Under the pieces are notes generated by a model. The model made no database searches, had not been told where the DNA came from, and worked only from the letters and a program-made list of their open reading frames with translations. A stretch of 64,000 nucleotides of DNA, from contig JBLDXI010000025.1 in NCBI GenBank assembly GCA_047495785.1, positions 992,001-1,056,000 of the forward strand, read 5' to 3'. The stretch comes from Lepidodermella squamata. Lineage: Eukaryota; Animalia; Gastrotricha. Position numbers and translations under genes: made by a program. Position 1 is the first letter of the stretch. Every line of letters starts with the position of its first letter. Shown here in pieces: positions 884 through 8,402 of the stretch.

Positions 884-1686
884 GTGAGGAATCTGATATT
901 GTCATTGCGTCTCTAGTTCGCAGTAACGACAAGGGCTCGATCGGTTTCGTCGGCCAGCCGCAACGCGTCAACGTTATGTTGTCCCGCGCCCGGCTCGGCA
1001 TGATCCTAATCGGCAACAAAAACACCCTGGAAACGTCGAAAGACCGCCAAGCCAACAAACCATGGCCTAAATTGTTGAAAATGCTCGACGAGAAAAAGGC
1101 GATTTACCCGGGTTTCCCGGGTAAATTGACTGAATCTATTGAAAAATGGAAAAATCTTGACGAAAATGAACGAAAAAATGAGCTCAATCCGCAACACAAC
1201 AGCGAGCGAGAGGCGCGTGAAAGGCAATTTCGACTCATGCGGGAAGAGACGAAGCGGCAAATGGATGAAATGCAACGCATCGAGCTGGAGCGTAAACTCC
1301 TCGAAGAAGAAATGCAGCACATGGAACAGGAACGAAAACGCCGTGAAGCAGAACTGAAGCGCGTGGAACAGGAGAGAAAACGGCGCGAAGCAGAGCGGAA
1401 GCGCATGGAGCAGGAGCAAAAGCGCCGCGACGCAGAATTGAAACGAATCGAGCTTGAACGAAAACGCCGCGAAGAAGAACTAAAGCGCGTGGAACAGGAA
1501 CGAAAACGACGCGAGGACGAGTTGAACCGCATGCGAGAAGAGCGCAGGAAAGAAGCGCAGGCTCAGCAGAAATTGCGAGACATGGGCCTGTGCCCGGCTA
1601 ATTACATATGGCTGCGAGTGGGTGGCGGGTACCGCTGCGCCGGTGGATCGCACTTTATGACCATGGGCCAACTTGGCATGAACTGA
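884..1686 (+). CDS. Last exon of ZNFX1-like SF1 (UPF1-like) helicase, paralog A: helicase motifs V-VI, charged coiled coil, C-terminal Cys/His motif. Upstream exons lie left of the window
   Basis: Acceptor tttag at 879-883, then (G)[44 protein letters not shown]; same intron position as paralog B; ends [29 protein letters not shown]; AATAAA near 1846. Confidence 0.85.
1270..1555 (+). repeat. Coding tandem repeat, ~42 nt/14 aa unit (RRExELKRxEQERK), coiled coil
   Basis: Recurring GAACAGGAACGAAAACGCCG/GAAGCAGAACTGAAGCGCG-like units; protein period of two heptads. Confidence 0.8.
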
Positions 1687-2095
1687 ATTATTGAAAGCAA
1701 CATACTTATTTTTGCCAATTACCTGGAAATCAAGAAAACGAACTGATTAAAGACTGCGAAACAATCAAGTCAACTCAATTACGTGCAAGTGATTTCTCTG
1801 TATTTTTCTCTTTGTTGAAAATAAACTCAGCATATAATCATATTCAATAAACCAATTCGGCTGCATTTTATTGGATTTTTTTTAATTTCAGCTTTTTTTA
1901 GTTCACTTACACAGAAAGCTGTACGATTGCTGCTAGGCAATGCAGGCATTGTAGGCCGGGTTTGCAGGGTCAAAGTACAACCCTAAAAATTGCGCGCGCG
2001 CGAAGGTTAAAAATAGCACTATTCTGACTAAATTACAGAAAACGAATACAGAAATGATATGTTTTCATCTCATCTAGAGTTTAATTAAAGACTCG

Positions 2096-5000
2096 ATGAT
2101 CCAAATCAAGCCCATGCACCAATTTGGAGCCTATTCTGATGCCAAATTCTCAGCCGCGAATTCGAACCGTGGCTCGAAGCCTAGCTCCAATGAAGAAGCT
2201 CTTTCGTTTCTCAACTACGTCCTCGATCGCGTCGACAAACTCGAAACGCTGAGCCTACTAACGCAAAGTGCCAACGGATCCGAATTTTTCATCGCCTGCA
2301 TGTCTCGACAAGAAATTTCTTTTGATTTTGTTCGCAATACACTAACACCTCTTATCAGGTTTGCAGAAGTTTCTCTTATTTCTTTGTGAATTTACCGCGA
2401 TTTTTTCCAATAGTTTTATCGCGGATGATCCAAGATTTGGCGTCGGTTCGTCTAGCCGCGTGCGAGCAGGTCTGAAATTTTTGAACTCGATAGGCCAAGT
2501 ACCGGGCCTGATTGACGGCTGCATTGAACTGGCGAGAAATGACAATCTCGGTTGTTGGAAAATTGACGATATTTTGCGATTCACCTGGTTTCTTTCTCGC
2601 ATTGACGTTTCAAATTTCGAAGATTCAATTGCCGATTGGAATTTGCTGCTCAGAAGCATTGATCTAAAACCAATCGTTCCGATTTTTTGTGACGAAATTC
2701 AATCGTTCGACTCATTTTTGAAAAACGAAACCGGCTGGCGGCATGATAATGATTTCGAAAATTTTCGTTCGATTTCAATTTTTCCAACTGCGGCCGAGTT
2801 AATTTCAGCCGCCCAGCCATTTCTGCCTGAAGCAAAATCAGTTTTTGAGTCGAAATTGAGCCCGAAAGACAAAATCTCAGCCTACTTAAATTGGTGTTTC
2901 CGCCTGTTGCGCTATGACGTCGTTAATTCGATGAAGTATGAAATCAGACTTCTGCTTCGAACTCGCGATGAAAATGACCTGGATGGCTACGAGTTGCGGC
3001 ATTTGAAGCGATTATCCCATCGAACCGTGGCTATCAATTGCGTGAAAAATGTCGTTTTCAACCGCAAATTTGGCCTAGTTTTCAACTTAACCGTGGATAA
3101 GGCTGTTGAGCTCAATTCGATTTTAGCGATTTTTGACTCCAAAAAATCCGAATTAATCGGTACGGCCAAAGTTGTTGAAATCGCTGAAGACGCCAAAACT
3201 GATATATCAGTCGTGTTTGAAGACGAAACCGCGATCGGAAGAATGTTTTCTAAACTAGGGCAAGCTGAAAATCTGCGGGCCGTTCCACTTTCGAATTCGT
3301 TTTTCGCGTTTCGACCAGTTTTAAATCGCCTTCAAAAACTGCCTAGTGTGCCTTTTTGCGACGAAATTTTACTGGGGAAAATTGGCGAAAAAATCGCTGA
3401 ACCTAGCTACTTGAACGGAAAAATGCGGAAAATCGTCGAAGCGATGGAAAAAATTCCGAAAAATGCCGATTGTTCACGCTTGGTTGGCGTTGCAAATCGC
3501 CTGACTTTGGACAAGCAGCAGAGGCGAGCGGTTCTTCGAGCACTCAATCAACGTGTCGGTTTGATTCAAGGCCCGCCGGGTACTGGAAAATCGTATTGTG
3601 GAGCGATTATTGCGAAATTGATTCACGACCATTCAAGCGAGACGATTTTATGCGTTTGCTACACGAATCACGCGCTGGACCAATTTTTGGAGGATTTGCT
3701 TGATTTTGGCATTCCGAGTTCGGCGATTATCCGGCTTGGGGCTGAGGAGAAAATTCGCGAGCGCATTAAACCGATGACTTTGAGCAATTGTCAAAAATCT
3801 GCGAAAAAATTGGCGAAAAATCGTAAAAAGGAACTGAAATTTTTCAGACGTAAAGTCGGGGAAATCAAGGCGAAAATTGATTTTCTCATCGATAAATTAC
3901 TCGGTCTGAAGAAGGGATTTGATAATTTTGCGGATTTATCATCTGTTTTGCCGCCAATGGCTCGGTTGGCTTTTACAATTGCGAAGAATAAGCGTGGAAT
4001 CAAGAAACGATGGGTTAAATGTGGGTCCGAGGCTGATTACCTTTGGAACCGGTGGAACCAGGGCCTTGACCGGGGTCGATTCGCTGCCCAGCGTTGCCAC
4101 GAAGAATCCGCTCAGATTTGGGCGTTGAATTTTTCTGAACGGCAGATGCTGTTGGATACGTGGCGGTCGGAAGCTATGCAGGTCCTGCAGCATGGTACGT
4201 AAATTCAGATTAATTTCTGCAATTTTTCTCAGAGGGCTGTGATCGAAAGAGTAATAAATTTGTTATAAATTTATTTTTTGCTTATAACGCTAATATAAAT
4301 CGCTCGCGCTAAGTTTTATGTGCAGCAAAAAAATACTGTGATTTTTTGCTGCTGTTTGAGTTCTAATATTCTCTTACGTTATTCACGTCATTTGGGTCAT
4401 TTCCTTCATTCATAAATTTTGACATTGCGCGCAGAGGTGAAACACTGCCCTCGCGGTCTGCATAGCCAATGGCCTCAAGACGATGTTCCAATTCTTTTGT
4501 TGAATCTGGAAAGCTAGTTTTTACCATTTTTCCCAAGAAAATAATCGTGATACAAAAACTACCAAAAGCTAACTCGATTTTCAATCCGCCAATAGCCGCA
4601 TTTTTCGTGTCACAAACTACCTGTATGCTGATGCCTTTATTTTATGATTTTAATCACAAACGAGTTTTCCCCAGCTTGAAAAATTTACCCTCTCACGCCT
4701 TATTTTGCATAATATTGAAGTGCCTCGTAAAAGCTGCCATTTCGAATGATGCAATAGCTAGATTTCAAGTCATCGAATGATTGTGGAATTTGTCAAAGGA
4801 GAAAAATATTTATCAGGGGTAATGCCAGCTTCTATAGCTTCTTATTCTGCTAAGAAAGCTGTTAGATACCAGTTAAAAGGTAACAGGTGTGCGATGAAAT
4901 TGAATGATAACACTCAATCTATCATATATTTTGAAACTCGTGATTCGATTTACCGGTTTATCGAAAACGATCTGCTGAAAATAGTGATAATGACTGTAGT

Positions 5001-8000
5001 AAAGAATGCAATTGAAGCAGCAGAATAGGCAGAATAGGCAATAATATAGCACCAACAATAAAAAGTGTACGATAGATTTTTTTTCTGTGTCGCACTATAA
5101 CGTCATTATAATGTTGTTATAAATCTTATTTATGTACGATCACAGCCCTCTGAGGTTTAGAGGCTGGTAGTTTTAAAGTTCGGAATCATAATTTGATGAA
5201 TCCTAATTCCTCAAGTCCTAATGTTGATGATCTAAAGTTAACTTCAACAAAATCCTTAAATTTAGCTTTTTTACAAATTAAAGTCAACTTACTTTGAAGT
5301 GTGATCGAAGGCTCAAGTTGAGAAAAATGAGTAAAAAATTGGAAATTTGTAACGATAATTAAATCACATTGACAAATCGATATTTTCCGAAGCTGATGGA
5401 GTGATTTTGACTTCGAAATCTTGCTCGGCGGCCTTAAGTTGACTTATTTATGATGAGTCCCGCCACCCAGCCCTAGTAGCTTGAGACTTCGCGTTCGATG
5501 CGCACATGTGCGTATTCAGTTGCCAAGGTGTTGAGCGATCGAGAGAAAAGGACGCCTTAAAGTAGACTTGAGGGTTGTTACACCCCTATGTGTCAGGGCT
5601 TTTTCGACGGGAAAAAACAGTTTCAACACGGAAAACAGCACACGGGTTCCGTATAGACCTCCAGGGCTGCAAAAAGTGTTGTATCCTGGTATCCTGGTAT
5701 CGAAGGTGCAATAAGGGCACGCCGTCCAGGGTCTTCCTGTAGATTTGTTTCGTTATAATTTACGAAGTTTTCAGGTGCAACATTGCTCAACACTTGTCTT
5801 GCTTGCGTTTTTAAAGTAATCGATGCAGTCCCTGACGCATTTTTCTGGCGAACTCGCTCGTGCTGGCGCTTCATAAATGAATAGTACCAGTCACGGCTTG
5901 GCAAGTTTCCTTCGCGGTTGAGTTCATCCAGGGGGATCCATGATTCCCTAACATTACGAGATAGTTGCATCAGATATTCCGTGGTTGATACAAAATAAGG
6001 GAAGCCGTGAAGCTCAAATCTGAGTCGAATGCTAGGTATCATTAGCTATAATCTTCTTTTATTGGTCGTATGCTTTCGAAAATGAAAAAAATGTTGAACT
6101 CAATTCTGGCGGACAACATTTCCATTTTGGACTTGAGCGGAGTATTCCCGATTTAATTGCTATCCATTTCACATAGCTTTGTCAAATTCACAGAACTCCG
6201 TAGAACTCATTTTCATGAAGCTGTTTCAAGAATTATCAGCTTAAGCATGCAGTTTTATGTTCACTTACTCCCTCGTGAAGTTGATGTTCCGGTTATCAGA
6301 AACCGCGATGTATAAGTTTTCCGCGTCGCCTAGTGCTTCGAAGAACTGCCCAGCAAAATCGTGTATGAGTATGTCAGCCAGGTTGCCAAATCTCAGTGGA
6401 AAGTTTCGTTCCGCCAAAATCAGCGCGAAATGTTGGACAAATTGTTTTTCAAGGTTTCGTGGCAGATCTGTCCCCTTGGCGTGTCGGGCCCTGATCAGTG
6501 CAGATGTTTCCGATAGTATGAGCGGACAGATATTTCCAAAATTGATCTAGCGCTGATGCTCATTGATTTCATCAGACGCGTATCTGAGTATTCATGTTTG
6601 GTGAGTACCTATAGATGATTTTCAGGGATACCTACGAGATATACATGCAAATCTAAAATCGCCATGAGGGCAGTCAGTTCGATTTCGTTGGGATTTATGC
6701 TTCGACCCAGCCCGATACATGATGTTATAGTCTTCGAGTTCTTGAGAAATTTCCTGAGATTTTATTTTTGAGCCGAATTCGAATCTATCAATTGTCACGC
6801 CTCCTATTCATGATTATAAATTTGAACCTGAATTCTCTAAAAACAAGTTTATATTATTTTTTAGGCATAGATCGCGAAATGGAAGAATTCCGATCGATCA
6901 AAGAAGAAATGTCCGTTCAATACCAGAAACCGCGAGTTGAATTGCTGAGAACGAAGCGAATTATCGGCTGTACAACAACGGGTGCGGCTAACTTCGCTGC
7001 GGAACTCGAAGCGGTCAAAGCCGGCGTTGTCATCGTTGAAGAAGCCGGCGAAATTCTCGAACCACACATTTTGACGAGCCTCTCATCGAAATGCAAACAT
7101 TTGATCATGATCGGTGATCACAAGCAACTGAGGCCGAAGGTTGATAGCTTCGAGTTGAGTGTTGAATCTGGGTCCGAGTTGAAATTCAACCGATCGCTGT
7201 TTGAACGGCTGGTTTTGAACGGATTCCCTCACGTTACGCTGACCCTTCAGCATCGAATGAGACCAGAATTTTCGGATTTGATCCGAAAATTATGCTACCC
7301 CGAGCTGCGAGACTCGCCGTCAGTTCTGAATAGACCGAAACTTAATGGAGCGATTTCCAGCGTGATTTTCATCAATCACGATAATTTCGAGGGCCATGGC
7401 CTGGAAAATGGCGGCGAAACCAGCGTTTCGAAGGTCAATTTCTTCGAGGCCGAAATGGCGATAAACATCACGCGTTACTTGCTGTGGCATGGCTACAAGT
7501 CTGATCAAATTGTGATTATCACGCCGTACCTCGGGCAGCTTTTTACGATTCGGAAGGCACTGTCTCGCCTGTTTGACGTCGAGTTGAATGGGCTGGATGA
7601 AGCGGAACTCGTGAAACTTGGATTGCTGACGAAGAAAAGCGATGGAAAATTTTCAAGCTCGAAATTCAAGGTTCGAGTGTCGACGGTTGACAATTTCCAA
7701 GGTCAGTTTTCGGATTTTATCCACTTATTAATTTTTTAATAATGATTTTATTAATGAGTGGAGTCAATTGAGGTAAATTTTAGTGGATCAAAAAATCATA
7801 ATCAAAATTCGGAATTTTGAAAATTGGAAACAAGCAGCATAAGTAATATGCTTGTTTCCAATTTTCCAATAATGCTAGAACTCCGTTTGAACCGTATAAT
7901 TAAATTTTTAGGATGAATTTGATATAAATTCTATCACATTTTTTCTCTTTGATTTTTGTGATTTTTTCAATACAGGCGGGGCTGAAGACTGTATGATGAT

Positions 8001-8402
8001 TAAATTGTCCATCGTTTCATCGTTTTAGGCGAAGAATCTGATATTGTTATCGCCAGTCTTGTTCGCAGCAACAACGAGAAGTCGATTGGATTTCTTGGCG
8101 AAATCGAGCGCGTGAATGTTATGTTGTCGCGAGCCAAACTCGGCTTGATATTAATCGGAAATTTGCAGACTTTTGAGGACGCCAAGTCGACTCTGTGGCG
8201 CGAACATCTCATCCCGTTACTCCGTCGAAAAAATGTGATTTTTCCTGGTTTTCCAGGCCGTTGTGATTTCCATTGCCGTGACTATCTTCTCTCGAAACCT
8301 GGTGATTTTGACAAACTGCTGCTGGAGGAGAAATGTGGATCTGGATCGTGCGGTATTCAAGACCAAATTGAAGATTTGAGCGAACTTGCTGACCTGATCT
8401 GA
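2096..8402 (+). CDS. ZNFX1-like SF1 helicase, paralog B; exons 2096-2358, 2414-4194, 6865-7701, 8029-8402
   Basis: All junctions GT-AG and frame-consistent. ZNFX1 motif RHDNDFENFRSISIFPT, Walker A GPPGTGKS, CYTNHALDQFL, IIGCTTTGAA, Walker [53 protein letters not shown]. Confidence 0.9.
4228..5154. mobile_element. ~930 bp element bounded by perfect 18-bp inverted repeats, inside ZNFX1-B intron 2
   Basis: CTCAGAGGGCTGTGATCG at 4228-4245 and CGATCACAGCCCTCTGAG at 5137-5154; no clear TSD; only short ORFs inside. Confidence 0.6.
5623..6600 (-). pseudogene. Degenerate pogo/Tigger-like (CENP-B HTH + DDE_1) transposase remnant in ZNFX1-B intron 2
   Basis: NLPSRDWYYSFMKR and NVAPENFVNYNETNLQEDPG match pogo-family WxxxFxxR and NxDET motifs (first catalytic D replaced by N); upstream minus-strand LEKQFVQHFALILAERNFPL resembles the CENP-B HTH start; interrupted by stops and frameshifts. 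Confidence 0.75.

What the first reader, a model, noticed from the sequence alone, without database searches (positions are those of the whole stretch)
884..8402. Tandem ZNFX1-like helicases of fungal/oomycete type in an animal genome: candidate HGT-derived RNA-defence genes
Seen: two paralogs sharing the FQG|EESD intron, among clearly metazoan genes. Recalled knowledge: EEAGEILExH, GDHKQLRPKV..ELSVE.G....NRSLFERLVL.GFPH, TPYLGQL...ELNGLD..ELV.LGL and especially the C-terminal KLRxMGxCPxxYxWxxxxGGYRCxGGSH match the ZNFX1 clade I know from fungi and oomycetes, which normally also carries NFX1 fingers and CbbX-like AAA domains. Canonical animal ZNFX1 reads EEAAEV and GDHQQLRP. Inference: horizontal acquisition (or retention of an ancient paralog), then intron gain and duplication.
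Basis: partly seen in the sequence, partly recalled or inferred. Interest (0 to 1): 0.8.

Follow-up and report, generated by a model that had tools for sequence, protein, structure and literature searches.

The report
Fungal-type ZNFX1-family helicase genes in an animal
A small invertebrate carries neighbouring genes for an RNA helicase of the branch known from fungi and protists (Hrr1/SAD-3 type) rather than the usual animal ZNFX1; the genes are real and old in this lineage, but transfer versus retention of an ancient gene stays open.

Summary
Window 884-8402 (+) contains the last exon of one ZNFX1-family SF1 helicase gene (copy 1, cut by the window start) and a complete four-exon paralog (copy 2, about 1084 aa). 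Both have a phase-1 intron in the Gly codon of FQ-G-EESD.

The helicase core matches human ZNFX1 far better than Upf1. It scores higher still (196-290 bits against 142-166) with a non-canonical branch: helicase-only and helicase + 3xAAA + Cys/His-tail proteins of Dikarya, Rozella, Rhodelphis, a green alga and a diatom. Almost none of these carry NFX1 fingers.

In trees, canonical animal ZNFX1 is a separate clade (100/100). The window gene is never inside crown Dikarya (0 of 1000 bootstraps). In the best tree it sits, with a metagenomic relative, as weakly supported sister to (Rozella, Dikarya). That is also the topology expected for vertical descent. Sister to canonical ZNFX1 is not rejected (AU p = 0.12).

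The paralogs are old (about 60% identity, dS saturated) and host-integrated. A distant relative has similar tandem genes. The HGT reading is therefore possible but unproven, and an oomycete link has no support. The adjacent intronless GALM is itself bacterial-like.

The scan had already noted a related giant helicase-AAA gene just upstream; I did not see it.

The parts
884..1686 (+). Copy 1, last exon only (the gene runs off the window start): helicase motifs V-VI, coiled coil, Cys/His tail, stop
   Evidence: Acceptor AG at 882-883, phase 1 in a Gly codon; aligns to residues 982-1060 of helicase-AAA protein P0122 and to the tail of P0132
1165..1569 (+). Copy 1 Glu/Arg/Lys-rich repetitive coiled-coil segment
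   Evidence: Translation; relatives have a similar charged stretch before the tail
1570..1653 (+). Copy 1 C-terminal tail motif [28 protein letters not shown]
   Evidence: 16-sequence alignment A2 with invariant G, C, W, G, R, C, G, G, H; AF2 pLDDT 82, one helix plus three short strands; no Pfam match, no significant Foldseek match
2096..2358 (+). Copy 2 exon 1 (ATG at 2096)
   Evidence: ORF plus donor CAG|GTTTGC; a 55-nt intron restores the frame. No homolog covers this N-terminus, so the start is a prediction
2414..4195 (+). Copy 2 exon 2: family-specific N-terminal region, Walker A (3570-3593), domain 1A and the insertion
   Evidence: Pfam AAA_11; ZNFX1 residues 415-786 at E = 5e-17; 32-34% identity to L001/L002
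4196..6864 (+). Copy 2 intron 2 (GTACGT...TTTTAG)
   Evidence: relatives align straight across the joint, so no exon is missing. The indels that one search lists for run X1 all lie here (12 further indel rows were not shown)
4230..5153 (.). MITE-like insertion with terminal inverted repeats (CAGAGGGCTGTGATCG), high copy, absent from one allele
   Evidence: Inverted repeat I1; depth 850-2100 against about 81, and an X1 contig that joins 4230 to 5153
6865..7701 (+). Copy 2 exon 3: helicase motifs II-V (VEEAGE at 7035, GDHKQLRP at 7113, QHRMRP at 7248, TVDNFQ at 7683)
   Evidence: Pfam AAA_11/AAA_12; 45-54% identity to the top representatives
7702..8028 (+). Copy 2 intron 3, phase 1 in the Gly codon of FQ-G-EESD, the same position as copy 1's last intron
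8029..8402 (+). Copy 2 exon 4: motif VI ([10 protein letters not shown] at 8109-8138), a conserved Cys/His-bearing post-helicase segment (8250-8351), stop; no AAA domains, finger array or tail
   Evidence: Aligns to P0122 residues 982-1099 and bird ZNFX1 residues 1165-1259

Best explanation
These are genuine, intron-bearing host genes of a small short-intron invertebrate. They encode Upf1-like SF1 RNA helicases of the ZNFX1 superfamily, but of its non-canonical branch. That branch holds fungal Hrr1/SAD-3-like helicases and the helicase + 3xAAA + Cys/His-tail proteins of fungi and protists. Copy 2 is a helicase-only protein of about 1084 aa with all ATPase/helicase motifs intact. Copy 1 ends in a coiled coil plus the family's C-terminal tail. 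The family is old in this lineage. The two copies diverged long ago, after their shared intron arose. A distant relative known only from a metagenome has the same kind of tandem array. How the family got there is not resolved: either an opisthokont-age gene that most animals lost, or an ancient transfer from a non-Dikarya eukaryote. Inferred mechanism, not shown here: ATP-driven 5'-3' RNA translocation or remodelling in an RNA-silencing or RNA-surveillance pathway. This follows from homology to Hrr1 (RdRP complex), SAD-3 (meiotic silencing), ZNFX-1 (germ-granule small-RNA inheritance) and ZNFX1 (antiviral sensing).
For: Family: AAA_11/AAA_12; ZNFX1 is the top solved match. Branch: exon 3 scores 196-290 bits against the best 150 of 1.84 billion representatives, but only 142-166 bits against canonical ZNFX1 of insects, a bird, a fish and a sea urchin. 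Named relatives are Dikarya, Rozella, Rhodelphis, Haematococcus, Thalassiosira and an Hrr1-annotated Ceratocystis protein. The signature motifs and the tail are shared. Canonical ZNFX1 forms a separate clade at 100/100. Host gene: GT-AG introns, GC like its neighbours, a high-copy host MITE that is polymorphic inside intron 2, and PIWI genes on the same contig. Constraint: all motifs intact; the listed X1 indels fall only in intron 2, and listed allelic codon changes are 7 synonymous to 4 non-synonymous. Age: the copies share about 60% aa and 59% nt identity with dS saturated; the window groups with L001 at 84-87%. L001/L002 show tandem helicase genes and a tail-bearing AAA gene directly upstream of a helicase gene. 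The same metagenome also holds the closest relative of the adjacent GALM. Literature: Hrr1 and SAD-3 are treated as finger-less fungal homologs of ZNFX-1 (bioRxiv 10.1101/220111). ZNFX1's 1C insertion is closest to Hrr1 (bioRxiv 10.1101/2025.10.14.682297).
Against: No spliced read was seen. Run X2 carries a SMART oligo, which suggests cDNA, and it covers exons 2-3, but it also covers some intron, so expression and the splice model are unproven. Copy 1 is incomplete in the window. Most close hits are unnamed metagenome or Logan proteins, so the taxonomic range of the branch, including other animals, is poorly known. The backbone of the tree is weak, and successive searches kept finding better trees. 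Function rests on homology only.
Confidence: 0.72

Rival explanations
1. Horizontal acquisition: the helicase family entered this animal lineage from a fungus, oomycete or other non-animal eukaryote, then acquired introns and duplicated.
For: Named close relatives are non-animal apart from Bemisia tabaci, which groups with the Dikarya sequences and looks like a separate case. Canonical animal ZNFX1 is clearly more distant. The immediate neighbour GALM is intronless and bacterial-like. Other notes of this scan list many fungal-type genes in this genome (not checked by me).
Against: The window is never nested in crown Dikarya (0 of 1000 bootstraps). No oomycete appears among the named hits. The best topology, animal lineage sister to (Rozella, Dikarya), equals the species tree. 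The paralogs are anciently diverged and are shared with a distant relative. Nothing was found in viral contigs. Relatives carry a same-phase intron 12 nt away, so intron gain after transfer is not needed.
Confidence: 0.33
2. A slowly evolving sister, or early offshoot, of canonical animal ZNFX1. On this reading it is a metazoan paralog that kept the ancestral helicase signature while canonical ZNFX1 diverged quickly and gained its finger/RZ module.
For: A tree that holds window + L001 with the canonical clade is not rejected (AU p = 0.12 against the best tree). It even beat the first free search.
Against: The joining branch in that tree is only 0.03, against a canonical stem of 1.2. A free search started from that tree moved the window back next to the fungal clade and gained 21 log-likelihood units. 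The window has no finger array or RZ finger.
Confidence: 0.1
3. Contaminant or chimeric assembly: the helicase genes come from a fungus or protist in the sample, not from the animal.
For: The closest named relatives are non-animal. No single Logan contig listed spans the whole stretch.
Against: The window is continuous with no N and has uniform GC. The 55-nt intron matches a short-intron host genome. A MITE that is high-copy in the same run sits, polymorphically, inside intron 2. PIWI, HECT and WD40 genes lie on the same contig. No public sequence is closer than about 56%.
Confidence: 0.02

Closest known systems
S. pombe Hrr1 / N. crassa SAD-3 (fungal RNAi helicases; here represented by the Hrr1-annotated Ceratocystis protein P0172 and by helicase-only fungal proteins of about 1000 aa)
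   Same: SF1 Upf1-like helicase with the ZNFX1-type N-terminal region and insertion. No NFX1 finger array. Size about 1000-1100 aa, like copy 2. Same branch in the trees.
   Different: Only about 45-50% identity in the core. The window lineage branches outside all sampled Dikarya. No partner proteins (RdRP, Cid12) or function are shown here.
Fungal/protist helicase + 3xAAA (CbbX/SpoVK type) + GGYRCxGGSH-tail proteins, e.g. Phyllosticta KAK8177442.1 (P0132) and Scleroderma KAL4079909.1 (P0129)
   Same: EEAGEI/GDHKQLRP helicase signature. A coiled coil followed by the same C-terminal tail as copy 1.
   Different: Copy 1's last exon runs straight from helicase motif VI to the coiled coil and tail, with no AAA domain. 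There are no AAA exons anywhere in the window. Copy 2 lacks both the AAA domains and the tail.
Canonical animal ZNFX1 / C. elegans ZNFX-1 (PDB 9q9z; P0384, P0271, P0272, insect ZNFX1s)
   Same: Same helicase superfamily and the best solved-structure match. A post-helicase Cys/His-bearing segment is conserved.
   Different: Canonical proteins read EEAAEV/GDHQQLRP, carry NFX1 fingers and an RZ finger (PF25396, PF20173), are about 1900-2100 aa, and form their own clade at 100/100. The window genes have none of these.
Bemisia tabaci XP_018911144 (annotated 'NFX1-type zinc finger-containing protein 1-like')
   Same: An animal-labelled protein of the non-canonical, finger-less branch, 1161 aa, helicase only.
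   Different: It groups with the Dikarya sequences: beside an ascomycete (Ciborinia) in the FastTree run (97), and within the Dikarya-dominated clade in the later trees. This looks like a separate, more recent event or contamination, and it is not a sister of the window genes.

Membership tests
ZNFX1/Hrr1/SAD-3 superfamily of Upf1-like SF1 helicases | AAA_11 + AAA_12 helicase core with intact Walker A and motifs II, III, V and VI | tested here: met
   Pfam; motif coordinates
ZNFX1/Hrr1/SAD-3 superfamily of Upf1-like SF1 helicases | Closer to ZNFX1 than to Upf1, Aquarius or Sen1, including the region N-terminal of the core | tested here: met
   9q9z at E = 4.5e-43 and 5e-17, against about 1e-16 and 6e-8 for Upf1/Nam7
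Canonical metazoan ZNFX1 | Array of NFX1-type zinc fingers after the helicase | tested here: not met
   tblastn of bird ZNFX1 on the window gives one strong hit past the core (residues 1165-1259) and a weak second alignment of 1376-1444 to the same DNA (E = 0.006). Copy 2 stops at 8402, and copy 1 goes into a coiled coil
Canonical metazoan ZNFX1 | C-terminal RZ-type finger (PF20173) | tested here: not met
   No Pfam hit. Profile-profile comparison of the copy 1 tail with the RZ finger gives probability 1.2%
Canonical metazoan ZNFX1 | Placement inside the canonical clade | tested here: not met
   The canonical clade excludes the window at 100/100. A sister position is not rejected (AU p = 0.12)
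Helicase + 3xAAA + tail family (fungi/protists) | EEAGE(I/V) and GDHKQLRP helicase signature | tested here: met
   Among the 141 hits, EEAGEI/EEAGEV was counted 92 times and GDHKQLRP 97 times; both occur in copy 2
Helicase + 3xAAA + tail family (fungi/protists) | Three CbbX/SpoVK-type AAA domains after the helicase | tested here: not met
   No AAA-domain match anywhere in the window. An upstream giant helicase-AAA gene is reported by another note of this scan, but I could not see it
Helicase + 3xAAA + tail family (fungi/protists) | C-terminal MGxCPxGYxW....GGYRCxGGSH tail | tested here: met
   Copy 1 only; copy 2 lacks it
Horizontally transferred gene (usual criteria) | Nested with support inside a donor clade | tested here: not met
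   0 of 1000 bootstrap trees place it inside Dikarya. It is sister to (Rozella, Dikarya) across a near-zero branch
Horizontally transferred gene (usual criteria) | Absent from other animals | tested here: inconclusive
   No named animal among the close hits except Bemisia.
Horizontally transferred gene (usual criteria) | Physically integrated in the host genome | tested here: met
   Introns, a host MITE in intron 2, animal-type PIWI genes on the same contig

The most novel reading that the evidence does not exclude
An ancient eukaryote-to-animal transfer brought a fungal/protist-type RNA-silencing helicase module into a micro-invertebrate lineage. The module would comprise an Hrr1-like helicase plus a helicase-AAA-tail protein. 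It then diversified into a tandem cluster about 40 kb from duplicated PIWI genes and now works with non-canonical silencing components, such as the RdRP-helicase another note reports in this genome. That would give this animal an RdRP-complex-like pathway otherwise known from fungi.
Probability: 0.3. Interest if true: 0.6.

Novelty: new member of a known kind. Interest (0 to 1): 0.45.

Why it matters
The literature treats ZNFX1 and Hrr1/SAD-3 helicases as one ortholog per eukaryote: finger-bearing in animals, finger-less in fungi. An animal lineage with an old, constrained tandem family of the finger-less type would mean one of two things. Either the two types are ancient paralogs, with wide loss in animals, or RNA-silencing helicases move between eukaryotic kingdoms. 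Both outcomes bear on how small-RNA amplification machinery evolved in animals. The case parallels the unresolved origin of the divergent RdRP clades of bdelloid rotifers (PMC7943196). The conserved Cys/His tail has no Pfam family or structural match and is an uncharacterised small domain.

Tried and rejected
- Exact look-ups of the copy 1 ORF and of GALM, meant to let me walk upstream of the window, found nothing on record. Copy 1's 5' part and the reported upstream giant gene stayed unseen.
- Three cluster look-ups gave names for only about a third of the proteins. The third was uninformative.
- A viral-contig scan found no relatives. In the metagenome scan the best match was 56% identical, so there are no close orthologs.
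- P0121 (Aquatica) topped the list only because two canonical ZNFX1 helicase domains in one gene model add their scores. It is not the window's type.
- The idea that the tail is a shortened RZ finger was not supported: hhalign probability 1.2%, and Foldseek gave no significant match, only zinc-ribbon-like rows at E > 3.
- The idea that the FQ|G intron is shared with relatives was rejected on inspection. Their intron sits in the Asp codon 12 nt upstream. L001 has neither intron.
- The first 'careful' tree search was a local optimum. A constrained search and a restart found better trees, so I rely on the restart tree and on AU tests.
- Paper searches on ZNFX1 phylogeny, on the Pfam domain names and on gastrotrich HGT found nothing specific.
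- The reads gave no splice joints.
- I could not confirm the organism's identity. GALM turned out bacterial-like and therefore useless for taxonomy.
Full report
**What is there.**
- The + strand of window 884-8402 holds parts of two paralogous helicase genes.
- Copy 1 is cut by the window start. Only its last exon (884-1686) is present, entered through an acceptor at 882-883.
  - This exon encodes helicase motifs V-VI ([10 protein letters not shown] at 964-993).
  - It continues into a 135-residue Glu/Arg/Lys-rich repetitive coiled coil (1165-1569).
  - It ends in a Cys/His tail, [28 protein letters not shown] (1570-1653).
- Copy 2 is complete: exon 1 2096-2358, a 55-nt intron, exon 2 2414-4195, a 2669-nt intron, exon 3 6865-7701, a 327-nt intron, and exon 4 8029-8402.
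  - All junctions are GT..AG.
  - Relatives align across every joint with no residues missing.
  - The model is about 1084 aa, and Walker A and motifs II, III, V and VI are all intact.
- I never joined the exons into one query.

**Family.**
- Pfam gives AAA_11 + AAA_12.
- Against all PDB chains, the best match is human ZNFX1 (9q9z): E = 4.5e-43 for exon 3 and 5e-17 for exon 2. Upf1/Nam7, Aquarius and Sen1 score about 1e-16 or worse.
- The genes are therefore ZNFX1-superfamily Upf1-like SF1 helicases.

**Which branch.**
- Exon 3 was run against 1.84 billion representatives. The 150 best score 196-290 bits at 45-54% identity.
- Canonical ZNFX1 proteins fetched separately (insects, a bird, a fish, a sea urchin; all with PF25396 and mostly the RZ finger PF20173) score only 142-166 bits.
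- The close hits have one of two architectures:
  - helicase-only proteins of about 1000 aa;
  - proteins of 2000-2500 aa with the helicase, three PF00004/AAA_lid_6 AAA domains, and often the same C-terminal tail as copy 1.
- Nearly all close hits read EEAGE(I/V) and GDHKQLRP, and nearly none has NFX1-type fingers.
- Named members are Ascomycota and Basidiomycota, Rozella, Rhodelphis, Haematococcus and Thalassiosira. A Ceratocystis protein is annotated as Hrr1.
- The only animal labels are:
  - Bemisia tabaci, which groups with the Dikarya sequences;
  - an Aquatica gene model that is really two canonical ZNFX1 units, and ranked first only because their scores add.
- No oomycete appeared among the named hits.
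- The literature describes Hrr1 and SAD-3 as the finger-less fungal homologs of ZNFX-1 (10.1101/220111).

**Phylogeny.**
- A FastTree of 231 cores and IQ-TREE (LG+C20+F+G4 by PMSF) on 101 cores both separate canonical ZNFX1 from everything else at 100 and 100/100.
- The window groups with a metagenomic gene piece, L001, at 84-87%.
- In 0 of 1000 bootstrap trees does the window fall inside the clade spanned by the named Dikarya sequences.
- Tree space is rugged:
  - A search that forced window + L001 to join the canonical clade beat the first free search.
  - In that constrained tree the joining branch is only 0.03, against a canonical stem of 1.2.
  - A free search restarted from it found a tree 21 log-likelihood units better, with window + L001 as sister to (Rozella, (two unnamed, Dikarya + Bemisia)).
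- The sister clade itself has SH-aLRT 92, but the node joining it to the window has a branch of 0.004 and support of 74.
- AU tests over the three trees keep all three. Sister to canonical ZNFX1 has p = 0.12.
- In summary, the genes are not canonical ZNFX1 and do not come from a crown fungus. The best topology is the one expected for an opisthokont gene inherited vertically. It would equally fit a transfer from an unsampled early fungus or another eukaryote.

**Residence in the host.**
- GC content matches the flanks.
- Introns are short and canonical.
- Intron 2 holds a 924-nt MITE-like element with terminal inverted repeats.
  - The element is high-copy in run X1 (depth 850-2100 against about 81).
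  - It is missing from an allelic contig.
- All X1 indels that one search lists fall in intron 2, though 12 further indel rows were not shown. Listed allelic codon differences in the exons are 7 synonymous to 4 non-synonymous.
- PIWI genes on the same contig match animal PIWIs strongly (Siwi, E = 3e-71).
- Expression is not shown:
  - Run X2 carries a SMART oligo and covers exons 2-3 at 99-100% identity.
  - It also touches introns, and no splice joint was listed.

**Age.**
- Over the 72 shared helicase codons, copies 1 and 2 are about 60% identical in protein and 59% in DNA, with dS saturated.
- The duplication is therefore old, and it postdates their shared intron.
- The closest relatives by exon 2 (32-34% identity), L001 and L002, come from one metagenome, ERZ23486764.
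  - They have short introns and tandem helicase genes.
  - In L002, an AAA-containing gene that ends in the tail lies directly upstream of a helicase gene.
  - The same metagenome also holds the best relative (51%) of the adjacent GALM, next to an intron-split SIR2 gene.
- A distant relative of the window organism therefore shares both genes.

**Introns.**
- Of 76 metagenome loci, 58 have an intron near the same spot.
- On inspection, that intron is phase 1 in the Asp codon of TI-D-NYQG, 12 nt upstream of the window's site.
- L001 has neither intron, but has another at residue 71/72 of exon 3.
- The position is thus near but not identical. It does not decide between inheritance and fresh gain.

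**The tail.**
- Sixteen tails align with invariant G, C, W, G, R, C, G, G and H.
- AlphaFold gives a helix plus three short strands at pLDDT 82.
- There is no Pfam family, no significant Foldseek match, and no profile similarity to the RZ finger.

**Verdict.**
- The 'fungal-type' assignment is right in substance.
- The HGT inference is one of two live explanations. Its fungal-crown and oomycete versions are not supported.
- Other notes of this scan suggest the genome is a gastrotrich or a rotifer and list many fungal-type genes. I did not verify these.

Noticed in passing
window:9002-10096 (-): The GALM (aldose 1-epimerase) gene next to copy 2 is a single intronless ORF. Its best named matches are bacterial mutarotases (249 bits for the best named one, about 232-249 overall, 38-41% identity), while human GALM scores 183 bits. 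Its closest relative (51%) is an intronless gene in a short-intron eukaryote from metagenome ERZ23486764. This makes it a candidate old bacterial transfer.
   Followed up: partly
window:4230-5153: MITE-like element, 924 nt, with terminal inverted repeats CAGAGGGCTGTGATCG. It is high-copy in run X1 and absent from an allelic contig. There is no second copy in this window.
   Followed up: partly
window:5623-6042 (-): A 139-aa ORF inside intron 2 that looks like a transposase fragment (it contains NYNETNLQEDPG). It has no Pfam hit at E <= 0.01.
   Followed up: no
L001:637-5635 and L002:1-5592: Two contigs from metagenome ERZ23486764 carry tandem helicase genes of the same branch, with introns of about 60 nt. 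In L002, an AAA gene ending in the GGxWRCGGGSH tail lies just upstream of a helicase gene. This is probably a distant relative of the window organism.
   Followed up: partly
P0124 (Bemisia tabaci XP_018911144): This whitefly 'ZNFX1-like' protein is finger-less and groups with the Dikarya sequences: beside an ascomycete in the FastTree run, and within the Dikarya-dominated clade in the later trees. It is a separate candidate fungal transfer or a contaminant.
   Followed up: partly
P0121 (Aquatica leii KAK4873187.1): This 2961-aa gene model contains two canonical ZNFX1 helicase units, so it is likely two fused neighbouring genes. Several ZNFX1 paralogs lie on the same firefly scaffold.
   Followed up: no
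L004 (ENA ERZ27247445, contig k141_1195831): A helicase-AAA gene appears here as three adjacent calls separated by only 4-32 nt. It sits beside a DUF5767 gene and a hAT transposase. The odd gene breaks may reflect a variant genetic code or tiny introns.
   Followed up: no
window:48585-60156 (-): Two tandem PIWI paralogs (ArgoN/PAZ/Piwi domains) lie about 40 kb from the helicase pair. I saw no evidence of a functional link.
   Followed up: partly
window:1-883: The sequence upstream of copy 1's last exon has no helicase coding. The preceding intron is therefore longer than 883 nt, against 327 nt in copy 2.
   Followed up: partly
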